This document shows positions 4,569 to 46,624 of a stretch of 64,000 nt of DNA, piece by piece. Within the stretch, counting starts at the first letter, position 1. Each line of letters begins with the position of its first letter. The notes beneath the pieces were generated by a model that saw only the letters and a list, made by a program, of their open reading frames with translations, was not told where the DNA came from and made no database searches. The stretch lies in IMG/VR virus record IMGVR_UViG_3300036766_002181, positions 62,001-126,000 of that record; one strand, 5' to 3'. Position numbers and translations under genes: made by a program.

Positions 4569-4954
4569 TTTTTTACAAGCTTATATACCGGAGATTCCCG
4601 TATCCAGTGAATTCCGCCAACAATCTTATCAGTATTTATTTGTTTCATTTCTATATTATATTTTTCTACATCAATATCCTGCCCAAAGTATTTTGTCATA
4701 TTTTGTGGTTCCTTGTCTTTTGTAAGGACTATAACCACATTGTCTATCTTATATGGAGTTAAGATTTGTGTGGTATGTTCAGGTGCAAAAACCATATACC
4801 ATTGCATAAGCAGCAAAAACAATGTGCCAGAAATGCAAAAAAATGGTACAGCTTCGCTTTTTGGGCTAAATTTATCTGCCGCATATATTACAAGAGATAC
4901 AAAACCTATTATTCCTGTGATCGTTAAAAGTGTAAGAATTCCTGCTTCTGGCAT
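4565..4954 (-). CDS. Membrane protein, two predicted TM segments
   Basis: Hydrophobic stretches ILTLLTITGIIGFVSLVIYA and VPFFCISGTLFLLLMQWYMVFA. Confidence 0.6.
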   Translation of the reverse strand: MPEAGILTLLTITGIIGFVSLVIYAADKFSPKSEAVPFFCISGTLFLLLMQWYMVFAPEHTTQILTPYKIDNVVIVLTKDKEPQNMTKYFGQDIDVEKYNIEMKQINTDKIVGGIHWIRESPVYKLVKK

Positions 4955-4955
4955 A

Positions 4956-5330
4956 TTAGTTTCTCCTATTTTCTATTCTTTCAAATGGAAGCTTATCATT
5001 GTCGTCATAAAGACTATACGTTATTAACTTATTATTTATCAAAAAAGTTAAAACCATTTTTATTGAAATTGTGCTGTCTTGGCGTGGAAATAAAAAATTT
5101 TCAGATGAAGTTCGGCCAACAAACATTGTCGCTATCGTATATTTTTGTAGATTGCCTATGCCCGTGTATCGATAAAGTTCTCCTGGTATTAATAAATTAT
5201 CGACCCTCTGCTCAAGCAACTTCCTTTTGTTTTTTAATTTATTCTTCCACTGCCGCTTTTTTGCGACATAAATCAAACATGGAAAAGCAAGCGAGAACAA
5301 CACCCATAATGTCAACATTATAGGACTCAT
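4956..5330 (-). CDS. PGxLY-family protein with N-terminal TM anchor
   Basis: TM helix, basic coiled segment, then LIPGELYRY...TMFVG...FLINNKLI. Confidence 0.6.
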   Translation of the reverse strand: MSPIMLTLWVLFSLAFPCLIYVAKKRQWKNKLKNKRKLLEQRVDNLLIPGELYRYTGIGNLQKYTIATMFVGRTSSENFLFPRQDSTISIKMVLTFLINNKLITYSLYDDNDKLPFERIENRRN

Positions 5331-26786: not shown

Positions 26787-27455
26787 TCAAAGCCACAATC
26801 TGGTAAGATTTGCATAAGAAAAAGCTAAAAGCTTTTCTAATTCGGCCTTATCTAAGTTTCCCCTGGCCACATGATTAGAGGCCTTGGCCAGATTCCAAAG
26901 AATTTCTCTTTTTCTTGAATCTGAAATTCTTGAGGTTAGCCAGGTTAGGGCTACAAATCTTTCTCCCTTGACAATTGGCATAATTTGATGTTCTAAAAAA
27001 GATGAAAATACAACTGCCGTTCCTGCTGCTGGTTTAAAAGTAGAATTGACCGAGCCAAAATTAAAAACCATTTCGCCACCGTCATATTCTTCTGGCTCAC
27101 TAAGCAAAATAGAAACTGAAAGATCCCTTCTTTTTAACTTTCCTCTTATTCCCGAATCTACATGTAGGCCGTAATGATCCTTTGTTGCCGAATCATATCT
27201 TGATATAAAAGCTCTTTCTACTTCTTCTGGCCAGGCAATGCTAGAAAATGATGGAGTATTTCTTAATTTGTCCTCTACTAGATCTGATATTTTTTGGGGC
27301 GGCTTTAGCATCTGACTATTTTTCTTTTGACTCTTTGCTCCAAACCCGGCAGTTGTGGCACCCTCTGACCAGCTTTCTTTTGGCTCTAAACTTATGGCAT
27401 TTCTTACTTCTGAAACTTCGTTTTTTGTTAATAGGTCAATTAAAAATATAGACAT
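26787..27455 (-). CDS. PKHD-type 2OG-Fe(II) hydroxylase (PiuC/YbiX-like)
   Basis: TAG..AK..K.N, YGLHVD (HxD), RDLSVSILLSEPEEYDGGE, LEH, GERFVALTW. Confidence 0.9.
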   Translation of the reverse strand: MSIFLIDLLTKNEVSEVRNAISLEPKESWSEGATTAGFGAKSQKKNSQMLKPPQKISDLVEDKLRNTPSFSSIAWPEEVERAFISRYDSATKDHYGLHVDSGIRGKLKRRDLSVSILLSEPEEYDGGEMVFNFGSVNSTFKPAAGTAVVFSSFLEHQIMPIVKGERFVALTWLTSRISDSRKREILWNLAKASNHVARGNLDKAELEKLLAFSYANLTRLWL

Positions 27456-31789: not shown

Positions 31790-32212
31790 TTATTTCTGTT
31801 GCTTATATTTCTTAGTGTTATATTCTTTCCAATAGATCCAACCACCATTTTCTGTGTGGAAGCCCCATTCTCTTACCTTTGGTCCCATTAGACAGACTGT
31901 GAGGGTTCCAGGAGACACAGAAACAATTGTATGAGCAGTACCCGCACCAATCAGGTTCAACCACCTGTGGGTTTCCAGGCCCGCCATTCGTCTTTCTGTA
32001 TACTGTCCTCTAAGAATAAGAGACAAAAAGGATACAGGATGATCGTGAAGATAGGGCTCGGGATCAGGGTGATTAAGCCAGTGCAAACAAATGGCAAACC
32101 ATGGAGTCTTAAACAGGTGCAACCTGGTGATATAGTTTGTTGGAACAAAGGTCCAACGCCAAAAGCACCAATTGGTTCCTGACTTATATTCTCTGTTTTT
32201 AAACATATTCAA
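31790..32212 (-). CDS. Cupin-fold protein
   Basis: LHWLNHPD...LHDHP.SFLSLILRG.YTE...AHTI...GPKVREWGF (His/His/Glu/His metal ligands). Confidence 0.75.
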   Translation of the reverse strand: MNMFKNREYKSGTNWCFWRWTFVPTNYITRLHLFKTPWFAICLHWLNHPDPEPYLHDHPVSFLSLILRGQYTERRMAGLETHRWLNLIGAGTAHTIVSVSPGTLTVCLMGPKVREWGFHTENGGWIYWKEYNTKKYKQQK

Positions 32213-33066: not shown

Positions 33067-33633
33067 TCAGTTGCTATCCACAAAAATATTCACGGTAAGA
33101 TCATAAAGCTCTTCGTTGGCAATAGGCTGTCTGCCAACAAAGGTTCTTAGGGAATGGGCTGTACTATTAAGTACATAATAGCCGTCACTAACTCTATGAA
33201 CTCCAAGTGGAAACAGGCCCTTAAGGCTAGTTAAAAGCGCCAGTCTGGTATCCTCTGCCCTGTTCCAGGTAGCAAAGTTTCCCCAAAGAAAACTTGCCTG
33301 CTGAAGTCTTTGTCCATTGGCTTGAAACCAAAAGTAAATCTGGCCCGGCTTTGTTGGCTCCTGGGAATAAAAGCTTGTTTTTTTGACCATCCCACCATTG
33401 CCATAGTTGCAGTTTCTTAAAATTTGGTCATCTTCATATACCTTCCAGGTGCCGCCCTGTTTTAAGCAGGTCTGTTCAACCTCTTCGACGGTTGTTTTTC
33501 CTACCTGGTAACCGGCGAATTTAACATATTCAGAATATGCTCTCTTGTTGTTTTGATCATTGGCAGAAACGCTACTTGCCGCCAGAAGTGCCAGGGATAA
33601 AATTATTGATATTGCCGATACGGTTTTGATCAT
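33067..33633 (-). CDS. Exported protein with signal peptide
   Basis: MIKTVSAISIILSLALLAASSVSA signal peptide; AAAGGA SD upstream. Confidence 0.7.
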   Translation of the reverse strand: MIKTVSAISIILSLALLAASSVSANDQNNKRAYSEYVKFAGYQVGKTTVEEVEQTCLKQGGTWKVYEDDQILRNCNYGNGGMVKKTSFYSQEPTKPGQIYFWFQANGQRLQQASFLWGNFATWNRAEDTRLALLTSLKGLFPLGVHRVSDGYYVLNSTAHSLRTFVGRQPIANEELYDLTVNIFVDSN

Positions 33634-33841: not shown

Positions 33842-34600
33842 TTAACTCTTAGCGCCAGCTCTATTAATTTGGCAGAGAATTTCTTGTTTAACAAATTCTC
33901 TTATTAACCTATTTTTTGTTGCTCTTTGCCTTTGTTCCTCTTTAAGATCTTCCAATGGAATATCGGTTATTGTATTTCCCATAAGATCGATTATCTTAAA
34001 GTTGCCTCTCTTGTCTTTTAAGACATTTCTCTGGTGTATGTCGATTAACTCAACCCCAATCTTATTGAGATATTTGGCCGTATTATAACACATTACCAGC
34101 ATTGGAAGATCATTCCTGGAAAAAATATGATGATTGTCTTTTCTTACTCTATAAATCACATCCTTAAGATTTAATAAATGGCCCTCAAAAAAAGTTTGAT
34201 CAGAAACCCTTTCAAAAAAGGCAAACTCTTCCTTGGATAGGGGATATAGCCTTTCTTGAATAATGACATAAAGTTCCAACTCCCAGGTATCATGTTCGTC
34301 TCTTGGCTTGGGATTCTGTACAGTAATCCTTGGAAGTTTATAAACACCATAAATGTTTGATATGTGTTTAAGCTTCTTTCCTTTAAGTCTGGCACTGACT
34401 CTGGCTTCAGACCTGTCTGTTGTAAGCTTAACCACATGACCAGATTTTGTAAGATATGCCTCTCCAAAGGCTCCCTTGCCAAGTTGCTGCAAATCAAATT
34501 TAGAGGTCGGGGTTAGACCAAGTTTGTTTGCCAGACTTGGGTGATGCTCAATTAGGGCATCCTTAAAAAATGTTTCTTTTTCAAACGTGCTCATTGACAA
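33842..34600 (-). CDS. Ser/Thr protein kinase-like protein
   Basis: LGKGAFGEAY, VVKLT, IIQERL, DIHQRN catalytic loop, IIDL. Confidence 0.88.
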   Translation of the reverse strand: MSMSTFEKETFFKDALIEHHPSLANKLGLTPTSKFDLQQLGKGAFGEAYLTKSGHVVKLTTDRSEARVSARLKGKKLKHISNIYGVYKLPRITVQNPKPRDEHDTWELELYVIIQERLYPLSKEEFAFFERVSDQTFFEGHLLNLKDVIYRVRKDNHHIFSRNDLPMLVMCYNTAKYLNKIGVELIDIHQRNVLKDKRGNFKIIDLMGNTITDIPLEDLKEEQRQRATKNRLIREFVKQEILCQINRAGAKS

Positions 34601-34607
34601 ATTATAA

Positions 34608-36008
34608 TTATTTCTTTTTATTGCTGCTGGCGAGCTTAATGTTTCTTATGGCTCCCCTTGCCAGCTTGTCTTGGGTTGGTACTGTTTCGTCGTCAAAGGT
34701 TTGTGAATTAACATTAGATCTAACCCAAATATAGGCCATTTGATCAAGTTTAATATCTCCTATAGAAATAACCTCTTTTTGATATCCATATTCATCAGCA
34801 ATTTCTGATTTGCCAAGAATGTCTGGATTTAATAAGAAGTCATTTCCTCCACCATGAATTTTGGCCCTCATTACAACGAAAAACTTATTTCCCTTGCTAT
34901 ACAGCAACGTTCCCCAATCCTCTTTTATTTTCTTAATAATGGCAGGATTGACTGTCCAGGAAAAGTGATCTCTGGATTGATGGCCTGCAAAAAAATTTCC
35001 ACCTACTTGGGATCTCCATTTTCCATCCTTTTCTTTTTGTCCGTCAATTGCCTTTTTATTGCCACCCAACATTTGTTGAAGAATTTTTGGATCTACCTCC
35101 ATAAATCTATAGGCATACTGATATCTTTGAGGAACCTCTAAAACTTTTTCATATTTTCCTGCATTCTTAAGTTGATCTAGTTTTTTAATCCAAGGATTTA
35201 ATGCTGATGGACTACCGTGGTAATGAACATTCATGGCATTTTTTAAATCTATTTCTTTTCTGGTATTTGGTTCTTTTGGCTTTGGCGTATCTTTTCTTTC
35301 TGGTGCAAATAAATATTGGCCAAAGACTTCATCCTTAGATGCTTCTGGCGCTTCTGATAATAACAATGTTAACTTTATAAGTTCTTCCCTGATCAGGTCT
35401 ACTAATAGCTGCTCATTTTTTATTTTTGGTATTTTTGATTTTTTTGATGAAAAGCCACGAAGATCAATTATTTTTATATTTCCATCTTTATCTTTAAGAA
35501 CATTTTCGCCGTGAACATCTGATAGATAAATTCCCATTTTTAGTAGGTCATTTGACAGTTCTAGACACATGTTTAATAATGGCAAGTCTTCTTTTACAAA
35601 GCCATCGTCTCCTTCCTCATTTTGTTTTGCTACTTCAATTTCATTTTCCAGACCATTGGTAGTAAGCGTTCCCTCAAAAACTTCATGCAGCTTCCAGAAG
35701 AACTCTTGTTCGTGGGCCGACAAGGGATACAATCTTTCTTGTATGATTGCAAACCAATCCTTCATATAGGGAATCTCTGGCAATCTATATACTTCCAAAA
35801 TATTTGCTATATGCTTTATTTTTTTTCCCTTAAGTCTTGCACTAACCGCAACCTCTTTAGTATCTGTTGTAAGCTTAAGAACGTGACCTGATTCTAACTG
35901 GTAGGCATAACCCCAGGCCCCGCCTCCAAGCTCAAGAGAATGCTCTGTTAGACCAAGCTTCTTGGCAACCTTTGGATAAGATTCAATCAGGTCTTCTTTG
36001 AGAGTCAT
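34608..36008 (-). CDS. Protein kinase fused to an R-S-E clade ADP-ribosyltransferase-like domain
   Basis: Kinase: LGGGAWGYAY, VLKLT, DVHGEN, IIDL. C-terminal domain: YAYRFM, FSWT, YQKEVI. Confidence 0.78.
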   Translation of the reverse strand: MTLKEDLIESYPKVAKKLGLTEHSLELGGGAWGYAYQLESGHVLKLTTDTKEVAVSARLKGKKIKHIANILEVYRLPEIPYMKDWFAIIQERLYPLSAHEQEFFWKLHEVFEGTLTTNGLENEIEVAKQNEEGDDGFVKEDLPLLNMCLELSNDLLKMGIYLSDVHGENVLKDKDGNIKIIDLRGFSSKKSKIPKIKNEQLLVDLIREELIKLTLLLSEAPEASKDEVFGQYLFAPERKDTPKPKEPNTRKEIDLKNAMNVHYHGSPSALNPWIKKLDQLKNAGKYEKVLEVPQRYQYAYRFMEVDPKILQQMLGGNKKAIDGQKEKDGKWRSQVGGNFFAGHQSRDHFSWTVNPAIIKKIKEDWGTLLYSKGNKFFVVMRAKIHGGGNDFLLNPDILGKSEIADEYGYQKEVISIGDIKLDQMAYIWVRSNVNSQTFDDETVPTQDKLARGAIRNIKLASSNKKK

Positions 36009-36018
36009 TGGCCAACCC

Positions 36019-36909
36019 TCAAAATAGGTTCTTTACAAAGTCAAGAACTCTTTCAAAGAAGCCGGCTTTCTTTTTCTTTTTTGATGGCAATGGCTTGCCC
36101 GATTCAGAGTCAACAGTTGTCCATACCTCTGATTGCAATCCCCAATCCTCATAGGGAAAATAGGTGTAACCATTATCGGCATATCTTTTGCCCCAAGAGT
36201 TTCTAACAATAAATCCTCCCTTGTCTTTTAGATACCCAACAATGCAAGTTGCATGGTAGCCGAGAAGAGCCTGCTTGTCATTTGCCTGTTTCCACATTCT
36301 TGGTCCATAGTTGTACACGGGAATTGTAAGCAGACAGGGACCATTTTTTACAAGAGCCTTCTTTAGGGCATCTATGCTCTTAACAACAGCATAACCCTGA
36401 ACCCTATATTCTGATGCCTCTTTTTTAAGGGCCTCTGTAATTGGTAGGGTTGTAAGATAGGGATAGTCTTTTTCTGGAACAGAGCCTACCTTTGTTAGGA
36501 TTCTCATCACATCTCTTGGATACATTCCCTCACCCTTTGTAGATCTACTATTATAGATAAACTGGGGGCTCATATAGTCCAAGAAATGAACATCCCTTCT
36601 TTCCTGCCATTCCTTCATTGCGGCAGAGGACATTCCAAAGCAACAACCTTGCTTTCCCTGATCTCTTATGGGAAGAAGCTCTGGTCTATAATCAAGATTG
36701 TCTGGAAGGTCATTTAGATTAATGGCCTGATAAATTGTTTCTGCCTCGTGATCTCTTGGATCGTGTGGACTCCTTTGTACTCTATCCAAACGAACATCCA
36801 GTGCCTCTGTTACCTTTCCACCAGAAGGAGGGGAAACAACAGTAGCAGGATAGATGGTCGTGATTGTTGATGATGGTGATGATTTTTTTGATTTTGATTT
36901 TTTGGCCAT
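36019..36909 (-). CDS. Papain-like (C1) cysteine peptidase
   Basis: LPDNLDYR, IRDQGKQGCC (Q, C), SPQFIY, YHATCIVGY (H), VRNSWG (N). Confidence 0.92.
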   Translation of the reverse strand: MAKKSKSKKSSPSSTITTIYPATVVSPPSGGKVTEALDVRLDRVQRSPHDPRDHEAETIYQAINLNDLPDNLDYRPELLPIRDQGKQGCCFGMSSAAMKEWQERRDVHFLDYMSPQFIYNSRSTKGEGMYPRDVMRILTKVGSVPEKDYPYLTTLPITEALKKEASEYRVQGYAVVKSIDALKKALVKNGPCLLTIPVYNYGPRMWKQANDKQALLGYHATCIVGYLKDKGGFIVRNSWGKRYADNGYTYFPYEDWGLQSEVWTTVDSESGKPLPSKKKKKAGFFERVLDFVKNLF

Positions 36910-38081: not shown

Positions 38082-38999
38082 TTAAAAATTTAAACTCTTA
38101 TGCTTTTTCTTATGACAATCATGACAAAGAACAATACCAGAAACCTTGTTTGTCAAATGATAATCCGTAACCGCCTTAATAATTTCTTGTTTTAATTGAA
38201 AGGTTTCTATGCTGTATGGCGTGGCAACAGCATAGTGATCAGCCCAACCCAATCGCCTTGCCTCGGATATAACAATAGAAGACATAGATTCTTGATTGTG
38301 ATGGACGTTTAATTTTGGATTTTTATTGCCATTGTTATAAAAATCTTTTCCACATTCCTGACAGGCAAATCTCGCCGCTTCCAAGAAGGGGCGCTTCCAT
38401 TCCTTATAAAGCCTTTTGCTGCTGCTACACATTGTGTGCAACGGAGCAATTCCTCCCTTCCATTGAGAATGCTCTGGTCCGCTTTTTCCCTTAAAAGTTC
38501 CATCTTTCCAATACTTCTTTGCCCTTTCACTTAACCTGGGATCTGCCGATCTGTTTTCGGCCATCTTCTTAATACTTTTATTGGTTTCCTTGGTCTTGCC
38601 CTGTGCCCAATGTTGTCCGGTTTCTTTTTCAAAGAATGGGTGAAAGGTTCCATCCTCAATCATTTTCTTTCGAGTCTCAAGGGACTTTTCTCTTGCCTTC
38701 TGATTGTGACCCCAATTGTTGTTCACACGAGCAGCATGACCACGAATATATTCTCGAAATCCTTCTCGAATTCCAAGAAACTTGGTTTTTTCTCCACAGC
38801 CACAGGCACATCTTGGTTCCGAGCCATTCAATAAGATATAAAGTTCTTTCGATGGTTTTTTGTGGCCTTTTCGAAAGTGAACCGACAAGGAAAGCAAAGA
38901 GGGAAAAAGGGCTGTGCAAAGCGGGCATACATGAGGTTTAATTTCCTCCTCTTCCTCCTCCTCTTTTGATGCTACAATTGCTGCTGTTTTGTTTTCCAT
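38082..38999 (-). CDS. HNH endonuclease with zinc finger and NUMOD-like segments (free-standing homing endonuclease)
   Basis: CPLC...H...H, CACGCG, KSGPEHSQWKGG, CQECG...LNVHH...LCHDCHKKKH. Confidence 0.8.
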   Translation of the reverse strand: MENKTAAIVASKEEEEEEEIKPHVCPLCTALFPSLLSLSVHFRKGHKKPSKELYILLNGSEPRCACGCGEKTKFLGIREGFREYIRGHAARVNNNWGHNQKAREKSLETRKKMIEDGTFHPFFEKETGQHWAQGKTKETNKSIKKMAENRSADPRLSERAKKYWKDGTFKGKSGPEHSQWKGGIAPLHTMCSSSKRLYKEWKRPFLEAARFACQECGKDFYNNGNKNPKLNVHHNQESMSSIVISEARRLGWADHYAVATPYSIETFQLKQEIIKAVTDYHLTNKVSGIVLCHDCHKKKHKSLNF

Positions 39000-39183: not shown

Positions 39184-39675
39184 CTAGTATTGTGCCACGG
39201 CGTTATCAAATCTCAAAGTTAATGTGATCTCCATCAGGTCAGTTGCAGAGTCATAGGCAAGATCTCCGAACTTGGCCTCTGTAATAAAGGCACCCTTGAT
39301 ATCCCAAAGTTGGACCACTGTTCCAACTGGATCTAACATCTTGATCTGTACGTCTCTCTTGTAAAAGTCAGCATAACCGGCTCTGCCTGAAACTGATTCA
39401 AAACAAAGACGAATCCATTCCATGACCTGCTGGGCTCCTGAAGGGGCAATAGGATCATGAAGGACTACGGCAAGAGTATCAAAGGTGGTTTTTCCGGCAA
39501 CATATCTGGTTGAGTTAATCCAGGGAATAGGAATTTCCTCTGTTTTATAACCAGGGCGAGCAGCAGACTTAACAATAAAAGAATCAATGCCTTCTATGGC
39601 AAAAACGAATCTTCGCTTTGCCAGTGGTTCAAACTTGTTTGGCAACAGGGCAGAGCTATCTAGCGTGATCGTCAT
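39184..39675 (-). CDS. Tail tube protein (T4 gp19-like)
   Basis: RRFVFAIEG, ARPGYKTEEI, YVAGKTTF, QVMEW, YKRD..I.MLDPVG..V..W...GAF, LTLRFD. Confidence 0.9.
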   Translation of the reverse strand: MTITLDSSALLPNKFEPLAKRRFVFAIEGIDSFIVKSAARPGYKTEEIPIPWINSTRYVAGKTTFDTLAVVLHDPIAPSGAQQVMEWIRLCFESVSGRAGYADFYKRDVQIKMLDPVGTVVQLWDIKGAFITEAKFGDLAYDSATDLMEITLTLRFDNAVAQY

Positions 39676-39749: not shown

Positions 39750-40847
39750 ATGATATTTGTTCAAAAAGAAGCTGCTGGTGACTCTGGCATGATAGAAAAA
39801 TCTGGAATTTATCAAATTAAAAATATCATAAACAATAAGTTATATATCGGTTCTGCTAGAAACTTCAGAATAAGATTTAATGACCATATTCATAAACTTA
39901 AAAGGAATAGGCATCCAAATAAATATCTTCAAAACGTTTATAATCAAAACCCAAAAAGCTTGGCTTTTACCATAATAGAAATTGTTGAAAACTGGCAACT
40001 TAATCTTCTTATAAAGGAACAAGAATATTTGAATGTCTTCCACGACAAACAGCAGACCTGTTATAACATGTGTCCTACGGCTGGCTCGGCTTTTGGAAGA
40101 AGACACTCAGAAGAAACCAAGAAAAAGATGTCACGATCTGCTATTGGACAACCGTGTTCTATAGAAACCAGGGCCAAAATGTCTGAGATAAGCAAAAAAA
40201 GAATTAAAGATCACTTTAAATCTGGCAAAGAAAATCCAATGTTTGGAAAAACCGGGAGCAAACACCATTTTTATGGAAAGCACCAAAGCTCAGAATCAAT
40301 TCTTAAAAGAAAAGAAACCATAGCAAAAAGAGACAAACCAATTGCCTATCATGCCAGACAAATTGCCCAATATGATATGGAGGGAAATTTAATTCAGATT
40401 TTTAAATCCGTATCAGAAGCAGAAAGACAATTGAAAAACAAAGGCATCAGTAGTTGCATGTATAGAAAAGCACAAACTTCTGCTGGTTTTGTCTGGAGAG
40501 ATCCGCTAGAGGATGGTTCTTTTCCGTCAAAAATTGATGCAATTACAAAAAAGCCCACTGGCTTTTTTGGCAGACATTCACAAGAGACAATAGAGAAAAT
40601 AAGAAAAAATCATCCAAGCAAAAGATCAGTACAACAATTTGACAAACTCAATCAAGCCATATCTCTTGAAACATATTCCAGTCTAAAGGAAGCCAGCAGA
40701 AAAACTGGAATAGTCTATTCTACAATTTGTGCCTGCTGTAAAGGCAAAAGACCATCTGCCGGCGGATTCATATGGAAATATCTTTTAGAAAAAGAACCGC
40801 CAGCAGATAATCAATATCCACCATCATCATCTTCTGGCTTGTTATAA
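39750..40847 (+). mobile_element. Free-standing GIY-YIG homing endonuclease with NUMOD3/NUMOD1 repeats, opposite to the structural operon
   Basis: SGIYQIKNIINNKLYIGSA, HSEETKKKMS, GKENPMFGK, IAQYDMEGNLI..F.S..EA; likely start at 39789. Confidence 0.9.
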
Positions 40848-40951: not shown

Positions 40952-42385
40952 TTATTTTCCTATTTTAAGCAAAAGTCTCTTTCCAAGTCTTTTTGCTCTT
41001 TCATCGATATCCTCGCCTGACTTATTCCATTCTTCTGGATCAAAGTCCTTATAATAGGCCTCAACTATATTTTCTACAGACATATAGGCGTTATAGGTAA
41101 GTTCTCCTACTGGAAGAACATTAAGAAGGGCCATAATGGTCTGTTGACTGAGAAGATCCTTTTCTTTTCCATTCTTTTCTATGCCGGCCAAAGAAAAGGC
41201 ATACTTCAGGGCAAGTCTATCTTTCTTAGAAAGAGCCATCTCTGCTTCAAGATTTGAAAGAAGTCTTAAACTCTTTTTTCTGTAGCCCTCTGGATTTCCG
41301 AGAAAGTTATCTGCATTATTGTCCTCTTCTGTGTCATCGTCGTCATCATTTTTCTTCATAAAAGGAAGAACCGTACCTTCTTGTTTCATGGTATGGGCAT
41401 CTGCCTTGTAGGGCATTTTAACAGCACCAGAAAATGTTGGATTCTTTGATTTCTTTACAATTCTATCATTGGCCTCAAAGGTTACCTGGGCAATGGCATA
41501 AATCTTTTCAAGAATCTTTGTTCTGATTTTCTTTGATAATGTTTTTATCATGGTTTGAAGTTTTGGTGCAATTCTATAATCTGGGCTTCGATTCATAAGA
41601 ACCTTATGGAGAGCCCAGTTGCTATCATAAATTTTCATAAATTCTTCCCTTGAGGGAAATCCTTTTCTTCCCTTTCCATGAAAAATAAAGGCATCAAGAA
41701 TTTCTTGCAATAAAACAACCTTTATTGCCTCCATTAATCTATCTGTAAGCTCTGCATTTCCAATAACAAGGGCCCGTCTTTCTGGATCCTCTATATATTG
41801 ATCCTCGCAGAAGATTGCATCCTTAAGAACCTTGTCGGTATCAAGATCCCTGTCTTCTTCTTCCTTGTCATCATCATTGGATTCTTTTTTAAGAGGCTCT
41901 TTTTCTTGATCTAGAATTTCTGGATTGTGGTAATGATCGGGCTCATATTCCTCTTTATCATCATAGGGATTATAACGTTTTTTCTTCTTTGCGCCGCCAT
42001 ATCCCCAGCCAAAATCATCGTCGCCATCATCTAAAGAGGTTCTTTTGTTATTAAAATGACCCGGATAACCCCTTGCTTCCTCTACCTCTGTTTTTTCCTT
42101 TGCATCCAAAGAAGTTTTTTTATTATCAAAATGATGATAGCCCCTTGTTGTCCTATCCTTTAATGAAGCATGAAGTTCAATTTCTTTTTGCAGGTCAAAG
42201 TTTGCCTTTAAAAGAGTTTCGTTGGCAAGCTCTACAACCCTATTGTGCGAAACCTCTGCTGCCGTAAAGATGTAGTCGTTAAGGTTTTCTAAATACTTTA
42301 TAAGATAGTTCTTTGCAAGCTCACGACTTTCTCTGGCAGCCTCTTGCATCCAGGGCTTCTGTCTTCTTGGAGGGCGATTGTTCAT
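40952..42385 (-). CDS. Hypothetical acidic/basic protein in the structural operon
   Basis: 477-aa ORF; internal duplicated RGY(P/H)..F.NK(K/R)TSLD. Confidence 0.65.
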   Translation of the reverse strand: MNNRPPRRQKPWMQEAARESRELAKNYLIKYLENLNDYIFTAAEVSHNRVVELANETLLKANFDLQKEIELHASLKDRTTRGYHHFDNKKTSLDAKEKTEVEEARGYPGHFNNKRTSLDDGDDDFGWGYGGAKKKKRYNPYDDKEEYEPDHYHNPEILDQEKEPLKKESNDDDKEEEDRDLDTDKVLKDAIFCEDQYIEDPERRALVIGNAELTDRLMEAIKVVLLQEILDAFIFHGKGRKGFPSREEFMKIYDSNWALHKVLMNRSPDYRIAPKLQTMIKTLSKKIRTKILEKIYAIAQVTFEANDRIVKKSKNPTFSGAVKMPYKADAHTMKQEGTVLPFMKKNDDDDDTEEDNNADNFLGNPEGYRKKSLRLLSNLEAEMALSKKDRLALKYAFSLAGIEKNGKEKDLLSQQTIMALLNVLPVGELTYNAYMSVENIVEAYYKDFDPEEWNKSGEDIDERAKRLGKRLLLKIGK

Positions 42386-43620
42386 TATGGCGCCTGTAGA
42401 TCTACGTCGGGCGGGCCATAGGAATCTGCTATGTCCTGCTGCATTTCATTCCAGGCATCAACTGCCTGTTCCTTGGTTACTTCATCTACAAATTCATTAC
42501 GATTAGAGCTATCAGGGGCTCCGTCATAACAGTTGCCACAACTAATTGTATATCCCCAATAGGATCCATCATAAAGCGTTGGCAAATCTCCACAATCATG
42601 GCATGGAAGAACACCTGGAAGATCCTTGCCTTCTACTTTTCCGCCAGCAAGATCTCTAGGGCCCTCTTCCAAAGCGGGTCTTCTTCCAAATTTATTTGAA
42701 CTTTTATGTCTTCTTTTTTGTTCGTCATAGTCAAAAATAGAACCCAGATCAAAATCATCCTCGCCACAATTTGGACACTTTATGTTTCTCTCATCATCTC
42801 CTATACCAAATCGAGAACCGCAACCATTGCAGCGTATGCGCACCTTTCTAACATCTTCCTTCAGACCTTCTTCTAAAACATCAATATCTGTGCCATGACA
42901 CTTCGGACAGGTAGGATTCATTGAATTTGTACTAAACTTTCTGCCGCATTCCATACATTCAACCCTTACTTTGTGATTATCTTTTCGGGGCTTCTCGGCA
43001 TGTTCGCCTACCGTACCAACAAGAGATCTTTTTGCCACGTTGTTCCTTTTTTCCGTATGCCATGGTTCATAGGCAGAGGGTATTTCCATCCAGGTTGATC
43101 CATCATGGGCACTTGCAAATACTTGGGCAATTTTCTTTTGGATTGGAAACTCATCCAAGACTTTTCTAACCTCTTTGCTATCCTTAACATAGAGATCAGA
43201 TTCAAAATGATGCATTGTCGCATCAATTCCTAAAAGCTCCTGATAAAGACTAGAATGTCCCATTTCTTCATTAACGGGGGCCGGTCTATAGAGGGGTTCT
43301 AATTTGTTTCTTAGCCATTCATAGGGATCGCCTGATCTTGCCTTCTGGATTTCATGGGGCATTTCATCACTATAATAATCAGTTAATACAGACACTAGCT
43401 CTTGAGAAAGGTTGTCTGTTTCTCCTTTAACAAAGGCTTCGAGTTCCTGATCCTCTACAGGATCAAGATCCAATCTTACCTCTTGCTTTTTTACGTAGGG
43501 CCGGAAGCCAAGTTTTTGTGCAACTTTCCTACCAAAAGAAGATTCTTTTAATACAATAGAAGAAACAATTTCTTTCAAATGCCTCTCTGTGAGTTTTGTC
43601 TTAATTGCCATGATTGCCAT
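42385..43620 (-). CDS. Multidomain zinc-ribbon protein with C-terminal Lar-like domain; putative internal head protein
   Basis: CMECG..CPKC, CNGCG..CPNC, and PCHDCG...ISCGNC...EQAVDAWNE; KLTE, LKE and LEE linkers. Confidence 0.65.
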   Translation of the reverse strand: MAIMAIKTKLTERHLKEIVSSIVLKESSFGRKVAQKLGFRPYVKKQEVRLDLDPVEDQELEAFVKGETDNLSQELVSVLTDYYSDEMPHEIQKARSGDPYEWLRNKLEPLYRPAPVNEEMGHSSLYQELLGIDATMHHFESDLYVKDSKEVRKVLDEFPIQKKIAQVFASAHDGSTWMEIPSAYEPWHTEKRNNVAKRSLVGTVGEHAEKPRKDNHKVRVECMECGRKFSTNSMNPTCPKCHGTDIDVLEEGLKEDVRKVRIRCNGCGSRFGIGDDERNIKCPNCGEDDFDLGSIFDYDEQKRRHKSSNKFGRRPALEEGPRDLAGGKVEGKDLPGVLPCHDCGDLPTLYDGSYWGYTISCGNCYDGAPDSSNRNEFVDEVTKEQAVDAWNEMQQDIADSYGPPDVDLQAP

Positions 43621-43645: not shown

Positions 43646-46624
43646 TTACACTTGGTTTGTAACCACAAAGTCAATGCTCACCGTTTCAAGCGTCTTGCTA
43701 GGCGTAATAAATATGGATCCTCTTATAATCCTGTTTTCTAAGTCTGCCTGAGTGGTCGTTGTTGTATCGATCTTAACCAAGAATCTTTCAACTCCCTTTT
43801 GATCCTGTATGGCCTTTAAAATTGGGGTTGTAAGCTGGGCAAATCTTGCAAGGGTTTCTTCACGACCCTGCTCAAAGAGCATTCTATAACCAACGGCCTT
43901 AACCTTGCGTCTAATGTCAATTAGAAGCCTTCGAACGTTAACTCTATCAAGAGAGCTTTCAGTTTGAAGAAGTGTCTTTTGTCCCCAAACCACAACTCCT
44001 TCTGAACCTGCAAAAGAAACAAGTGGATTAATGTTTGCATCCTGAAGAGTGTCCATGTTTTCTTTAGACAGTCTAACGGCTGCCGATTCTACTGTGTCTA
44101 GAGAGCCTCTGGTAAATCCAGCAGGAGCAAACCATGGATGGGCTACTGCATCATTCTTTGCAAAGGCACCAAGAACGGCGACTGAGGGTGGCACCACTCT
44201 GGTTCTTCCTGTAAAACTATCTCTAAGAACAACATCTGGGAAATAGGCAGCACCAAAAGAGCTGTTAATTCCACGGGCTGTATGTTGGTTGGAGGTGTTC
44301 TTAACGCTCAAAATCTGATTACTTGAAGAAATTGGCAAATTCTGAATATCATACTGTGGAACATCCATAATAAAGACAGAATCAAATCTGTTTTCATTAA
44401 CAAGAAGCGCCCTATCAGTGATTACTGTATGGCGAATTCCTGGAACTGCCATCATTTGAATGTCAATTTCTGTAACATCCTCAAAGATATCCAATGCCTT
44501 ATTAAAAGCAGCAACCGTTGGTCCGTCAGTAAGGCCACGATCTGCATAGGTCATTTCTTCTGTCACGGCCAAGTCTGTCATGTTGACGGCATCTCTGTCG
44601 AAAACATTTGTTCCATCAAATCCGCCATGCAAGAAGAAGGAGAACTTGGCAACATTGCGTGTTGCGGCATCAGTCAAATCATTTACAGAAAGGGCTCTAG
44701 TGTCGCTGTCCACTGTAACATTACCATCTCTTACATAAATCCACTCATCCATTTTTTGTGTATTTGGTTTATCAAAGGCATTAATTGCAATTTGTATATT
44801 TCCCAGGGAGAACTTATTATGATTAAATCTATCAGCATCAAGAATGCCATTCTCGGCAGAATCGGCAACTCCCTGGTTATTGCTTAAGACCATATTCATA
44901 AAGTCTGTATGGAAATTTGGATAATACTTGTTAAACGACAGGATGTTGGTATCCTGGGCCGTGCTTAGGTTTGGCTCTGCAACGCTGGTCTTTTCTTCAA
45001 ATTGAATGCCCCAATAAAGAGCCTTATCAACAACTCTATTTGGCGTTGAGCCTCTGGTAATTCTTTCTCTAAGAGGAACAGGCAATTGAACAATATTAAA
45101 GAAGGGATCAGAAACAGAAAGATAATCACCATCATCAAAACTGTTAAATGGAGCCGACCCAGAAGTTACAAGGTGTGGAACCCCACGGAAACCAAATGGA
45201 ACTGCGGCAGGAGAAAGTTCGCCATCAGAAACCTTGTTGGCCATTTCAACTCTCATATATCTTGAATTGTTTTCAAAATTGCCTTCGGTAATAAGCTTTT
45301 GTGAGCCAATTGCTGCATCAAAATTAAAGAAGGTTTTTGTATCTCCAACAATTCGAGCAACATATTGCGGAGAATCAGGATTTAGACTTAATCCTCTCCA
45401 TGCCTCAACTGCAACAGGAGCCTTGTCATTGTCGTTAAAATCTCTTACAAGGAGATCAAACTTGCCATAAGGCTCTGCATCTGTGCCTGGGATAATATTC
45501 TCAATTGAGAACTTAAGTCTAGAGTTTGGTTCCTTGCCATCTGAAAGGGCAGAAATCTTAAACAGATTTTCTTCCTGGCCACCAAATTTCTGTGAAACCA
45601 CATAAACAGATTCGGCAGTACGATATCTGTCTTCAAAATTTTCAAAACTTGGGATCGTGGTTGAGCCCGAGTTTCTAGTTGGCGAAGCTGACGTTAATAG
45701 GAAAACAACGTCTTCAGTTTCGAGTGCTCCCGAGACTGCGCCTACACCAAAATCCTCTAAAACAACACCTGAGCCTGTTGGCGTGGCTAGGGCTGGGTGA
45801 ATTTTATAATCAGCATATAGGAGGTGGCCTGCCTGCTCGACCTTATAAGGATCTGTATTAAGCACCTTGGTAAGATAGTTTGGTGCCGTTGGGTCAAAGG
45901 AGGCTGTAATAACATTTGGAAAGGCTGGATCAGGATTGCTGTGTCCATTTAGAAGCACAACAAATTCTTGACGCCCGTTGGCTATGTTTAGAGAGCCTGT
46001 AAGGCTCCCTGAAGCCGTTGAAGAAGTGCCTGTGGCATCTGGTGCATTGTCTGCCACTCTGCTGCTAGAGAGGGTTGCATACACTCCTGAAGCTGCAAAA
46101 ACAATACCACGAACAACCGGAACTCCTTCTATTGGTAGGCCAGCATCGGAAAAAATTGTTGAGGAACCTGTTTGCTTCATATAGCAACCAAGGACAAAGG
46201 TTCTGCCTTCATCTCCTTCGCCAGGAACGGTTACATATTGATTATCATCAAGACCACCACCAGGAGCCTGTGGAAGAACCGCACCGACAACAAAGCCGCC
46301 AAAAACAACACGGCCAGAGTTGTCACCAGCATCTTCTCTTGCCTTGCCTGAACCGGCACCAAGAACCCTAAGAAAGGTTAATGCCTGTGAATTTCTTAGC
46401 CATTCGATGGCTGCCATGGGAGCAGCAGCCTGATCATCTGTCGATGTACCAAAATCTACCACGAAGTCTGAATCCGTTGGAAGGGTTACAGGAACGAAGG
46501 CTGGTCCCTTTTGAGAAGTGCCTATAACTCCAGCCGGAATACCGGCAGGACGAATTGAAGTTGGACCAGTTCTATTGATTACCCTTGTCGTAACTCCTGC
46601 GCTCTTGTATGTTATTTGTGACAT
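43646..46624 (-). CDS. Tail sheath protein (copy 1)
   Basis: GVIGTSQKGPAFVP, LRVLG, GGFDG, AVPGI, YFPDV, PPSVA, PWFAPAG..RG, INP, WGQKTL, RVNVRRL. Confidence 0.95.
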   Translation of the reverse strand: MSQITYKSAGVTTRVINRTGPTSIRPAGIPAGVIGTSQKGPAFVPVTLPTDSDFVVDFGTSTDDQAAAPMAAIEWLRNSQALTFLRVLGAGSGKAREDAGDNSGRVVFGGFVVGAVLPQAPGGGLDDNQYVTVPGEGDEGRTFVLGCYMKQTGSSTIFSDAGLPIEGVPVVRGIVFAASGVYATLSSSRVADNAPDATGTSSTASGSLTGSLNIANGRQEFVVLLNGHSNPDPAFPNVITASFDPTAPNYLTKVLNTDPYKVEQAGHLLYADYKIHPALATPTGSGVVLEDFGVGAVSGALETEDVVFLLTSASPTRNSGSTTIPSFENFEDRYRTAESVYVVSQKFGGQEENLFKISALSDGKEPNSRLKFSIENIIPGTDAEPYGKFDLLVRDFNDNDKAPVAVEAWRGLSLNPDSPQYVARIVGDTKTFFNFDAAIGSQKLITEGNFENNSRYMRVEMANKVSDGELSPAAVPFGFRGVPHLVTSGSAPFNSFDDGDYLSVSDPFFNIVQLPVPLRERITRGSTPNRVVDKALYWGIQFEEKTSVAEPNLSTAQDTNILSFNKYYPNFHTDFMNMVLSNNQGVADSAENGILDADRFNHNKFSLGNIQIAINAFDKPNTQKMDEWIYVRDGNVTVDSDTRALSVNDLTDAATRNVAKFSFFLHGGFDGTNVFDRDAVNMTDLAVTEEMTYADRGLTDGPTVAAFNKALDIFEDVTEIDIQMMAVPGIRHTVITDRALLVNENRFDSVFIMDVPQYDIQNLPISSSNQILSVKNTSNQHTARGINSSFGAAYFPDVVLRDSFTGRTRVVPPSVAVLGAFAKNDAVAHPWFAPAGFTRGSLDTVESAAVRLSKENMDTLQDANINPLVSFAGSEGVVVWGQKTLLQTESSLDRVNVRRLLIDIRRKVKAVGYRMLFEQGREETLARFAQLTTPILKAIQDQKGVERFLVKIDTTTTTQADLENRIIRGSIFITPSKTLETVSIDFVVTNQV

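What the first reader, a model, noticed from the sequence alone, without database searches (positions are those of the whole stretch)
34608..36008. Protein kinase fused to an ADP-ribosyltransferase domain with a Q-x-E catalytic motif
The N-terminal half has an intact kinase (GxGxxG, VLK, DVHGEN, IDL). The C-terminal half (about 34608-35350) shows the R-S-E ART triad in the correct order: YAYRFM (about 35100-35120), FSWT (about 34950-34965) and YQKEVI (about 34775-34790). Established: E-x-E ARTs usually modify Arg, whereas Q-x-E ARTs (C3, pierisin/scabin, DarT) modify Asn, Thr or DNA bases. A two-writer protein (phosphorylation plus ADP-ribosylation) in a phage late operon is, to my knowledge, unusual; its target could be host protein or nucleic acid.
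Basis: partly seen in the sequence, partly recalled or inferred. Interest (0 to 1): 0.85.

Follow-up and report, generated by a model that had tools for sequence, protein, structure and literature searches.

The report
Phage kinase fused to candidate ADP-ribosyltransferase
A jumbo-phage gene joins a small protein kinase to a domain from a large, unnamed phage-only family that keeps the catalytic signature of ADP-ribosylating toxins, so it is probably a two-enzyme host-modifying effector, although the toxin-like fold could not be confirmed by structure search.

Summary

The N-terminal about 205 aa is a minimal protein-kinase-like domain with all catalytic residues. A profile of it matches over 1000 solved protein kinases (best E 2e-5). 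It resembles T7-kinase and Kinase-PolyVal clusters. A 44%-identical solo paralog lies immediately downstream.

The C-terminal about 235 aa belongs to a large family:
- It has 879 clusters at 50% identity.
- It is absent from Pfam, PHROGs, NCBIfam and 50,697 GenBank phages.
- Over 108 sequences the only invariant residues are E252, R301, W351 and E412.
- S350 is 90% conserved, and position 410 is only ever E or Q.
- This gives aromatic-R ... S-W-T ... phi-x-x-[E/Q]-x-E, on the strands expected for R-S-E ADP-ribosyltransferases.

Language-model neighbours of two members are all ART-superfamily families. Some relatives are fused to NUDIX or HExxH domains.

Against this, two confident AlphaFold models (pLDDT 91) gave no significant Foldseek match to any solved ART. 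HMM and hhalign comparisons also found nothing.

Verdict: the kinase is solid. The ART is likely (about 0.65-0.7) but unproven. The kinase fusion is unique among 150 relatives and rests on a single contig. "Late operon" is not shown.

The parts
34608..36008 (-). Whole gene: 466-aa kinase + ART-like fusion protein
   Evidence: Single ORF without stops. It is identical to the one database entry P0001, from one 244,715-bp contig, IMGVR_UViG_3300036766_002181.
35394..36008 (-). N-terminal minimal protein-kinase-like domain (residues 1 to about 205)
   Evidence: phrog_18305 'kinase' at 8.8e-5. Kinase-PolyVal at 0.007-0.02 and Pkinase at 0.05-0.15, both below the Pfam cut-offs. The A4 profile matches 1033 solved kinase sequences, best 2.2e-5. 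ESM Atlas gives 0.96 by features and TM 0.74 by structure to viral kinase clusters.
35910..35927 (-). Gly-rich ATP loop G28-G-G-A-W-G33
   Evidence: G28, G30 and G33 are invariant in 8 kinase modules. Translation checked.
35874..35876 (-). K45 (VLK), the ATP-anchoring lysine. Its presumed partner E52 is at 35853-35855.
   Evidence: Both are invariant in A4. They align with the VAIK region of MAPKAPK2.
35502..35519 (-). Catalytic loop D164-V-H-G-E-N169
   Evidence: D164 and N169 are invariant. The loop aligns with the D-x-K-x-x-N loop of solved kinases.
35454..35471 (-). I-I-D182-L-R-G185, the DFG-equivalent metal-binding Asp
   Evidence: D182 and G185 are invariant. The stretch aligns with the DFG of solved kinases.
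34662..35363 (-). C-terminal ART-like domain (residues 216-449), member of an unnamed phage family
   Evidence: The family profile matches residues 216-449 at E 5e-102. The family has 879 representatives at E <= 1e-3. AF2 model: pLDDT 90.9, pTM 0.89.
35253..35321 (-). Conserved extended N-terminal segment of the ART-like domain (G230 ... R238 ... E246 ... T249 ... E252)
   Evidence: E252 is 108/108, E246 107, G230 105 and R238 101. It is modelled without regular secondary structure but at pLDDT 95-98. Its role is unknown.
35106..35111 (-). Y300-R301: aromatic-Arg on the first long strand (the candidate NAD-binding Arg)
   Evidence: R is 108/108. Position 300 is Y (99), W (7) or F (2). The pair lies in strand 84-91 of the model.
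34953..34961 (-). S350-W351-T352: S-x-T motif at the end of a strand, followed by a helix
   Evidence: S 97 / G 10. W 108/108. T 93 / S 13. Strand 134-138 is followed by helix 141-151.
34824..34838 (-). F391-L-L-N394-P395: conserved loop and short strand between the S and E strands
   Evidence: F 106/108, N 99, P 100. A role in nicotinamide or phosphate contacts is inference only.
34773..34796 (-). ARTT-like loop D-E-Y407-G-Y-Q410-K-E412, then strand E-V-I-S-I-G
   Evidence: E412 is 167/167. Position 410 is E (113) or Q (54) only. The phi position is aromatic in 94/167 and otherwise aliphatic. This fits X-X-phi-X-X-E/Q-X-E of PMC7827354.
33842..34600 (-). Adjacent solo paralog of the kinase domain (252 aa). 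The real start may be the ATG at 34594.
   Evidence: 44% identity over 236 aa, E 6e-49, and no ART-like part.
36019..36909 (-). Papain-family (C1) cysteine peptidase gene. It ends 10 nt before the fusion gene and probably shares its transcription unit.
   Evidence: Peptidase_C1 at 8.9e-18 and phrog_16701 at 4.4e-18. That it belongs to the same functional unit is inferred from spacing only.

Best explanation
The gene encodes a two-enzyme phage effector, a small 'polyvalent' protein.

N-terminal half. It is a stripped-down protein kinase of the type seen in phage T7 kinase and in the kinase modules of giant phage polyvalent proteins. All residues for ATP binding and phosphotransfer are present.

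C-terminal half. It belongs to a large, so far unnamed, phage-restricted domain family. I read this family as a divergent clade of R-S-E-class mono-ADP-ribosyltransferases:
- R301 and S350 hold NAD+.
- E412 activates the ribose-nicotinamide bond.
- The loop Y407...Q410 selects the acceptor.

Because this copy has Q-x-E while two thirds of the family have E-x-E, its acceptor is more likely not arginine. It could be another side chain or a nucleic-acid base.

The protein is most likely made with the neighbouring papain-like peptidase and the solo kinase paralog. It would act on host macromolecules to take over or disarm the cell, as T4 Alt/ModA/ModB and T7 kinase do.

Shown: the ORF, the kinase homology, the family, and its conservation pattern.
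Inferred: the ART fold, NAD+ use, the target class, the timing, and any delivery with the virion.
For: Kinase:
- Catalytic residues are invariant in 8 modules.
- The profile hits 1033 solved protein kinases, best 2.2e-5, aligning both lobes.
- ESM Atlas neighbours include Phage_T7_kinase, Kinase-PolyVal, Pkinase and OspG at 0.89-0.96 (the best clusters carry no common Pfam family). Structural TM is 0.74 to a viral cluster half of whose members carry Pkinase.
- The same module occurs three times in 2255-aa and >1731-aa polyvalent-type ORFs.

ART-like domain, sequence conservation:
- The only invariant residues in 108 sequences are E252, R301, W351 and E412.
- S350 is 90% conserved.
- Position 410 is exclusively E or Q.
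- No degenerate copy occurs among 170 instances.
- The ARTT-type phi-x-x-[E/Q]-x-E pattern is present.

ART-like domain, predicted structure:
- In two independent AF2 models (pLDDT 90.9 and 91.5), R, S and E sit on the 1st, 2nd and 5th of six main strands, with a helix after the S strand.
- PMC7827354 describes this arrangement for the ART core.

ART-like domain, similarity searches:
- The listed named ESM Atlas neighbour families of two members about 30% identical to each other are all ART-type: DUF4765 (the ART-like D4 of CNF, PMC7883292), NarE, Lart1, DRAT, Pertussis_S1/Scabin and ADPrib_exo_Tox.
- The highest-probability Foldseek PDB hits are R-S-E ARTs: EcPltA, Vis, CARDS, PltC and pertussis S1. 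They make up 8 of the top 50 for model 1.

Context:
- Relatives are fused to NUDIX, to HExxH domains, and weakly to Tpt1.
- Relatives occur as tandem paralog arrays, like T4 modA-modB.
- Over 40% of jumbo phages are reported to carry ARTs (PMC9503650).
Against: - No Foldseek hit to any solved structure at E <= 1e-3 for either model. ART hits have TM 0.19-0.31 and prob <= 0.21. Hot-dog thioesterases and other folds rank alongside them.
- The family profile finds nothing in PDB sequences at E <= 10.
- No member hits an ART family in Pfam or NCBIfam.
- hhalign against T4 ModA and ModB gives probability below 1%.
- ESM Atlas scores of 0.83-0.91 are 'leads only' by the tool's own calibration.
- The fusion is seen on one contig only.
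- Expression timing and packaging are unknown.
Confidence: 0.65

Rival explanations
1. The N-terminal kinase is real, but the C-terminal domain is not an ADP-ribosyltransferase. On this reading it is a new fold, or a fold not represented among solved structures. Its conserved R, S-W-T and E/Q-x-E would serve another chemistry (for example a hydrolase or a nucleic-acid enzyme) or ligand binding, and the resemblance to the R-S-E signature would be convergent.
For: - Two high-confidence models find no solved ART, or anything else, at significant Foldseek scores.
- There is no HMM or hhalign link to any known ART family.
- The invariant E252 and the conserved N-terminal segment have no counterpart that I can name in classic ARTs.
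- The significant BFVD matches are uncharacterised phage proteins.
Against: - Exclusive E/Q alternation two residues before an invariant E, together with an aromatic-R and an S-x-T on the preceding strands, is the specific pattern of R-S-E ARTs.
- The named language-model neighbours are all ART-type for two divergent members.
- The few structure hits with non-trivial probability are ARTs.
- A relative is fused to NUDIX.
Confidence: 0.2
2. The C-terminal domain has the ART fold and uses NAD+, but it is not a protein-modifying transferase. It would modify DNA or RNA (as pierisin/Scabin, DarT or RhsP2 do), transfer NAD-capped RNA (as T4 ModB does), or simply hydrolyse NAD+ or an ADPr-derived immune signal.
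For: - The Q-x-E variant is shared with DNA-targeting pierisin and ScARP as well as with Asn-specific C3 (PMC7827354).
- NUDIX fusions and weak Tpt1 fusions in relatives point to nucleotide or ADPr chemistry.
- The contig of one relative carries an RNA ligase and a second ART nearby.
- ModB RNAylation is a precedent (PMC10468400).
Against: Nothing here discriminates between acceptor classes. Most of the family is E-x-E, which is typically arginine-specific. The fusion to a protein-kinase-like domain suggests protein targets.
Confidence: 0.25
3. The fusion is not biological. On this reading two adjacent genes, a solo kinase and a solo ART-like gene of the kinds seen elsewhere, were joined by an assembly or sequencing error, or the ART-like part is also made separately.
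For: - The fused protein is known from one contig and one sequence only.
- No other of the 150 best family representatives carries the kinase.
- At the junction, I-K-L-T-L-L-L-S-E-A-P-E-A mirrors the M-K-L...L-x-E-x-P-E-A N-termini of stand-alone relatives, with ATA where they have ATG.
Against: - The frame is continuous, with no stop or frameshift over 1401 nt.
- The kinase's C-terminal helix is complete and runs straight into the family's N-terminal segment.
- Gene fusion by loss of a stop-start junction is a common natural event.
- This domain family is fused to many different partners.
Confidence: 0.1

Closest known systems
R-S-E class mono-ADP-ribosyltransferases (cholera/pertussis/C3/iota toxins; phage T4 Alt, ModA, ModB)
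   Same: - Aromatic-Arg on the first strand.
- S-x-T on the second strand, followed by a helix.
- phi-x-x-[E/Q]-x-E opening the fifth strand, then E-[VI]-[IL] and a hairpin.
- Phage-encoded, often in tandem paralogs like modA-modB.
- Found in a large myovirus.
   Different: - No detectable sequence-profile similarity, and no significant Foldseek similarity to solved members.
- The middle residue of the S motif is an invariant Trp.
- There is an extra, strongly conserved extended N-terminal segment with an invariant Glu (E252).
- There is a small hairpin inserted between the R and S strands.
Polyvalent proteins of phages and conjugative elements (Iyer, Burroughs, Anand, de Souza, Aravind 2017; PMC5512222), including Kinase-PolyVal (PF18762) and ART-PolyVal (PF18760)
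   Same: - Unrelated enzymatic 'effector' domains joined in one polypeptide.
- A reduced protein-kinase module with intact catalytic residues.
- The same kinase module is repeated in giant polyvalent-type ORFs (L007, L008).
- A peptidase gene lies next door.
   Different: - Only two domains and 466 aa.
- The Pfam Kinase-PolyVal score is below threshold.
- The ART of polyvalent proteins is of the H-Y-D type, whereas this domain is R-S-[E/Q]xE and does not match PF18760.
- No MuF, portal or other packaging domain is present.
Phage T7 protein kinase (Gp0.7; PF27024)
   Same: A small phage-encoded protein-kinase-fold enzyme. ESM Atlas feature score is 0.95 and structural TM is 0.58 to T7-kinase clusters. 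Recent work shows that T7 kinase broadly disarms host defences (PMC13645617).
   Different: No direct sequence match was shown here. T7 kinase is an early gene and is fused to a host-transcription shut-off domain, not to an ART.
DUF4765, the ART-like domain D4 of cytotoxic necrotizing factors (PMC7883292)
   Same: It is the best-scoring named language-model neighbour of two family members (0.89-0.91). It is itself an ART-like fold that only structure comparison revealed.
   Different: CNF D4 lacks the R-S-E triad and showed no NAD+ binding or activity. The family here keeps the triad without exception.

Membership tests
R-S-E class ADP-ribosyltransferases | Arg (usually after an aromatic residue) on the first core strand | tested here: met
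   R301 is 108/108. Position 300 is Y, W or F in 108/108. It lies in strand 84-91 (model 1) and 80-88 (model 2).
R-S-E class ADP-ribosyltransferases | Ser (S-T-S-type motif) on the second core strand | tested here: met
   S350 is S in 97 and G in 10. T352 is T or S in 106/108. It lies at the end of strand 134-138, followed by helix 141-151. The middle residue is an invariant Trp, which is atypical.
R-S-E class ADP-ribosyltransferases | Catalytic Glu in an [E/Q]-x-E motif at the start of the fifth strand, preceded by an ARTT loop X-X-phi-X-X-E/Q-X-E | tested here: met
   E412 is 167/167. The -2 position is E (113) or Q (54) only. The phi position is aromatic in 94/167 and is Y407 in this protein. 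The definition is from PMC7827354. E412 opens strand 198-202.
R-S-E class ADP-ribosyltransferases | Six-strand plus helix ART core that superposes on solved ARTs, with R, S and E lining one NAD+ cleft | tested here: inconclusive
   The order of secondary-structure elements fits. However, Foldseek gave no ART at E <= 1e-3. The best were Vis (prob 0.21, TM 0.25-0.28), EcPltA (TM up to 0.31) and PT S1 (prob 0.11).
R-S-E class ADP-ribosyltransferases | Detectable sequence-profile relationship to a known ART family | tested here: not met
   No ART family was hit in Pfam or NCBIfam by any of 108 members. The profile against PDB sequences gave 0 hits at E <= 10. hhalign against T4 ModA and ModB gave prob below 1%.
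R-S-E class ADP-ribosyltransferases | NAD+ binding and ADP-ribose transfer | not testable with these tools
   This needs biochemistry.
Protein-kinase-like superfamily (Kinase-PolyVal / T7-kinase-like) | Gly-rich loop, beta3 Lys, alphaC Glu, catalytic D-x-x-x-x-N and DFG-type Asp | tested here: met
   G28, G30, G33, K45, E52, D164, N169 and D182 are invariant in alignment A4. They align to the equivalent residues of MAPKAPK2.
Protein-kinase-like superfamily (Kinase-PolyVal / T7-kinase-like) | Significant profile or structure similarity to known kinases | tested here: met
   A4 against PDB gave 1033 kinase sequences, best 2.2e-5. ESM Atlas gave 0.96 by features and TM 0.74 by structure. phrog_18305 'kinase' scored 8.8e-5.
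Pfam Kinase-PolyVal (PF18762) | Score above the Pfam gathering threshold (27 bits) | tested here: not met
   15.2-16.9 bits, with only residues 158-182 aligned. It works like, and resembles, this family, but it is not a formal member by HMM.
Pfam ART-PolyVal (PF18760) | H-Y-D active site and an HMM match | tested here: not met
   No HMM hit. The active-site pattern here is R-S-E, whereas ART-PolyVal is H-Y-D according to PMC5512222.
Polyvalent proteins (PMC5512222) | Two or more unrelated effector domains in one polypeptide of a phage or conjugative element | tested here: met
   Kinase plus ART-like domain in one ORF of a 244.7-kb phage contig with tail sheath and tube genes.
Polyvalent proteins (PMC5512222) | Packaging into the virion and delivery at infection | not testable with these tools
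   No MuF or portal fusion is present. Only proximity to tail genes was seen.

The most novel reading that the evidence does not exclude
The C-terminal domain founds a new, large, phage-restricted clade of the ART superfamily. It would have its own N-terminal 'clamp' segment and an S-W-T motif. Its Q-x-E members, including this protein, would modify a non-arginine acceptor, possibly a nucleic acid. In this one phage the ART would be physically coupled to a protein kinase, so that phosphorylation and ADP-ribosylation hit the same host target or regulate each other.
Probability: 0.15. Interest if true: 0.8.

Novelty: new variant of a known kind. Interest (0 to 1): 0.6.

Why it matters
Phage-encoded writers of post-translational marks are now known to be broad tools for host take-over and for disarming defence systems. 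Examples are T4 Alt/ModA/ModB (including RNAylation), AcrIF11 and the T7 kinase.

If the C-terminal domain is an ART, this finding has three consequences:
- It exposes a family of at least 879 sequence clusters that no domain database names.
- The family is missing from cultured phages, so a sizeable part of phage NAD+ biology is currently invisible to annotation.
- The E-x-E / Q-x-E split inside one family would be a natural experiment in acceptor specificity.

The kinase fusion would be a compact model for cross-talk between two modifications.

If the domain is not an ART, it is a confidently predicted fold with no significant match among solved structures, with an absolutely conserved catalytic-looking triad. 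That is also worth a structure.

Tried and rejected
Searches that found nothing:
- Pfam, PHROGs and NCBIfam scans of the C-domain and of 108 relatives gave no family.
- tblastn of the whole protein, the C-domain and two relatives against 50,697 GenBank phages gave no match, even at E 10.
- The family profile against PDB sequences gave nothing.
- hhalign of the family against T4 ModA and ModB gave nothing.
- Word-index search for kinase homologs returned nothing.

Attempts to build deeper profiles of known phage ARTs:
- T4 ModB in IMG/VR gave only 95-97% identical copies.
- ART-PolyVal from L001 gave 3 close homologs and one weak locus.
- This was too shallow, so no profile-profile test against a real ART family could be made.

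Structure searches:
- Foldseek against PDB for two models gave no significant hit. Hot-dog thioesterase hits (TM 0.12-0.15, prob < 0.08) were rejected as noise.
- BFVD gave three significant matches, but they are unnamed phage proteins (phiN3, SP-15). I fetched the first 50 kb of phiN3 and then dropped the trail, because the UniProt entries are 'uncharacterized'.

Context tests:
- I tested whether the gene upstream of a stand-alone relative is a kinase (a split version of the fusion). It is not; it is a second ART-like paralog.
- I tested whether the papain-like peptidase or other neighbours travel with the family. They do not in L001 and L003-L005.
- The T4-type late promoter motif TATAAATA is not enriched.
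- Sigma-70-like promoters and terminators are at chance level.
- The supplementary tables of PMC9503650 are not held.
Full report
**1. What is there**

The window comes from a 244,715-bp IMG/VR contig, IMGVR_UViG_3300036766_002181. Its features mark it as a jumbo myovirus:
- A 992-aa tail sheath gene at 43646-46624 (-).
- A tail tube gene at 39184-39675 (-).
- GIY-YIG and HNH homing endonucleases.
- Its sheath is only about 30% identical to anything in GenBank phages.

The finding is a single ATG-started ORF at 34608-36008 (-), 466 aa, with no internal stop.

The gene is tightly packed between two others:
- A papain-family C1 peptidase gene at 36019-36909, which ends 10 nt before the start.
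- A 252-aa gene at 33842-34600, which is a 44%-identical paralog of the kinase half only.

**2. The kinase half (residues 1 to about 205)**

Single-sequence HMM evidence is weak:
- phrog_18305 'kinase' at 8.8e-5.
- Kinase-PolyVal at 0.007-0.02 and Pkinase at 0.05-0.15, both under the Pfam cut-offs.

IMG/VR holds relatives of this module inside giant ORFs. One is 2255 aa (L007) and one is >1731 aa and truncated (L008). In each, the module recurs three times around a cytidylyltransferase/NMNAT-like domain.

In the 8-module alignment A4, the invariant residues are G28, G30, G33, K45, E52, H66, D164, N169, D182 and G185. These are the Gly-loop, the beta3 Lys, the alphaC Glu, the catalytic D-x-H-x-x-N and the DFG-type Asp.

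The A4 profile hits 1033 solved kinase sequences, best 2.2e-5 for MAPKAPK2. It aligns both the N-lobe and the catalytic-loop/DFG region.

ESM Atlas gives:
- Feature scores of 0.92-0.96 to viral clusters that include members carrying Phage_T7_kinase, Pkinase and Kinase-PolyVal, and 0.89 to an OspG cluster.
- Structural TM of 0.74 to a viral Pkinase cluster.

The 'IIQE' at residues 88-91 fits the conserved Gln that Iyer et al. describe for the reduced kinases of polyvalent proteins (PMC5512222). I regard the kinase assignment as settled. Whether its substrate is protein is inferred from these nearest relatives.

**3. The C-terminal half (residues about 216-449): a large unnamed family**

The word-index search found five relatives. 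They are either stand-alone (226-258 aa) or fused to an HExxH domain.

The exhaustive profile search found:
- 879 representatives at 50% identity with E <= 1e-3.
- 475 at E <= 1e-10.
- 65 at E <= 1e-30.

No Pfam, PHROG or NCBIfam model covers the family. tblastn with three members finds nothing in 50,697 GenBank phages. ESM Atlas labels its clusters as 100% viral.

Architecture within the family:
- Members occur singly.
- They occur as 2-3 tandem repeats within one protein.
- They occur as tandem gene arrays, two in L001 and three in L004.
- They are fused to at least 30 unrelated extensions, including HExxH (three times) and NUDIX (once).
- The kinase fusion is unique among the 150 best representatives.

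**4. Is it an ADP-ribosyltransferase?**

Evidence for, from sequence conservation:
- In 108 sequences (mean column identity 18%), only E252, R301, W351 and E412 are invariant.
- Y/W/F300 precedes R301 in every sequence.
- S350 is S in 97 and G in 10.
- T352 is T or S in 106.
- Position 410 is E (72) or Q (36) and nothing else.
- F391, N394, P395 and G417 are each conserved in more than 90%.
- Across 167-170 instances, including every tandem copy, none has lost R, W or the catalytic E.
- The eight residues ending at E412 read D-E-Y-G-Y-Q-K-E. This is the ARTT consensus X-X-phi-X-X-E/Q-X-E of R-S-E ARTs. The phi position is aromatic in 94 of 167 instances.

Evidence for, from predicted structure:
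- AlphaFold2 models of this domain and of a 30%-identical member are confident (pLDDT 90.9 and 91.5; pTM 0.89 and 0.87).
- Both have the same element order: strand with Y-R; small hairpin; strand ending in S-W-T; helix; long strand; short strand at F391; short helix; strand opening with E412; hairpin partner; C-terminal helix.
- Leaving out the hairpin, R, S and E lie on strands 1, 2 and 5 of six, with one core helix. PMC7827354 states this arrangement for all ARTs.

Evidence for, from similarity searches and context:
- The named ESM Atlas neighbour families listed for both the window domain and P0010 are all ART-type: DUF4765, NarE, Lart1, DRAT, Pertussis_S1/Scabin-like, DUF7587 and ADPrib_exo_Tox. 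DUF4765 is the ART-like D4 of CNF toxins (PMC7883292).
- In the Foldseek PDB lists, the hits with the highest probabilities are R-S-E ARTs. For model 1 these are EcPltA, Vis, CARDS toxin and PltC, 8 of the top 50. For model 2 it is pertussis S1.
- The NUDIX fusion, the weak Tpt1 fusion, and a neighbouring ART-PolyVal gene, RNA ligase and faint YAcAr in L001 place relatives in NAD/ADPr-type contexts.

Evidence against:
- None of those structure hits is significant. The best ART hit has E 0.12, prob <= 0.21 and TM <= 0.31.
- The family profile finds no PDB sequence.
- hhalign against T4 ModA and ModB is blank.
- I could not build deep profiles of known ART families with the tools at hand.
- I could not inspect model coordinates.

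I put the ART reading at about 0.65-0.7.

**5. How it most likely works**

- Shown: the two domains, their conservation and their families.
- Inferred from the class: R301 and S350 bind NAD+, E412 is the catalytic base, and Y407/Q410 in the ARTT-like loop choose the acceptor.
- Inferred from Q-x-E: in R-S-E ARTs, E at this position goes with arginine, while Q goes with asparagine (C3) or guanine (pierisin, ScARP) (PMC7827354). This copy therefore probably does not modify arginine.
- Inferred from analogues: the protein probably modifies host proteins or nucleic acids during infection, like T4 Alt/Mod and T7 kinase (PMC5512222, PMC10468400 and PMC13645617). It is possibly processed by, or acts with, the adjacent C1 peptidase.
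- Not established: 'late operon'. The evidence is only same-strand proximity to the tail genes. Promoter and terminator scans are at chance level, there is one terminator-like hairpin at 37604-37583 (-), and TATAAATA is not enriched.

**6. Is the fusion real?**

The frame is continuous. The kinase's last helix (compare the paralog's C-terminus) runs directly into L-L-S-E-A-P-E-A, which is the N-terminal segment of stand-alone relatives. At the junction there is ATA where the stand-alone relatives have their ATG. This looks like a natural stop/start-loss fusion, but it rests on one contig.

**7. Comparison and novelty**

The protein works like a miniature polyvalent effector. Its kinase resembles Kinase-PolyVal and T7 kinase but is under the Pfam threshold. 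Its second domain is not ART-PolyVal, which is H-Y-D, and is not detectably Alt/Mod. It is best described as a new, unnamed family carrying the R-S-E signature. I rate it as a new variant of a known kind, with interest 0.6. The single fusion matters less than the large, uncatalogued, phage-only candidate ART family, with its built-in E/Q dichotomy.

Noticed in passing
window 33842-34600 (-): A solo 252-aa paralog (44% identity) of the kinase domain lies directly downstream of the fusion gene. Its catalytic loop reads D-I-H-Q-R-N. The likely true start is the ATG at 34594 rather than the TTG at 34600.
   Followed up: partly
window 36019-36909 (-): A papain-family C1 cysteine peptidase has a Lys/Ser-rich N-terminus and a poly-Lys plus amphipathic C-terminal tail. 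It ends 10 nt upstream of the fusion gene. It does not travel with the ART-like family in other loci.
   Followed up: partly
window 35253-35321 (-), and alignment A2: The ART-like family has a strongly conserved, non-helical N-terminal segment (F-G-x-Y-L-F...R...E-x-N-T-x-x-E) with an invariant Glu (E252). It is modelled at pLDDT 95-98. I know of no counterpart in classic ARTs, and its role is unexplained.
   Followed up: no
L007:1514-8281 and L008:19-5214: These are giant polyvalent-type ORFs, 2255 aa and >1731 aa (truncated). Each has three copies of the same kinase module around a cytidylyltransferase/NMNAT-like domain (GRFQPFHxGH). This links the kinase module to another NAD-related enzyme.
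   Followed up: partly
L004:4573-6720 and L001:7216-8681: Three (L004) and two (L001) tandem paralogous genes of the ART-like family are present. L001 also has an ART-PolyVal gene (4694-5278, -), an RNA ligase and a faint YAcAr hit within 3.5 kb.
   Followed up: partly
window 38082-38999 (-) and 39750-40847 (+): An HNH-like gene and a GIY-YIG/NUMOD homing-endonuclease gene are inserted among the tail genes. The HNH-like protein has a close homolog (E 2e-57) 2 kb from the ART-like gene of L003.
   Followed up: no
window 33067-33633 (-): A 188-aa protein with a clear N-terminal signal peptide follows the kinase genes. It has no family assignment.
   Followed up: no
window 26787-27455 (-) and 31790-32212 (-): A 2OG-Fe(II) oxygenase gene and a cysteine-dioxygenase-like gene (phrog_4786, 4.7e-25) lie nearby. 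They are auxiliary metabolic-type genes in the same strand block.
   Followed up: no
window 42385-43620 (-) and 43646-46624 (-): A 411-aa protein rich in zinc-ribbon motifs (HypA, Lar and NrdR-type hits) sits next to an unusually long (992 aa) tail sheath protein. Only the C-terminal third of the sheath protein matches known sheaths.
   Followed up: no
P0051, P0002/P0007/P0035, P0080: Family members are fused to NUDIX (P0051, 1.5e-16), to a shared HExxH domain (P0002, P0007, P0035), and to a region with a weak Tpt1/KptA hit (P0080, 0.004). A further recurrent C-terminal extension of unknown function is shared by 7 representatives.
   Followed up: partly
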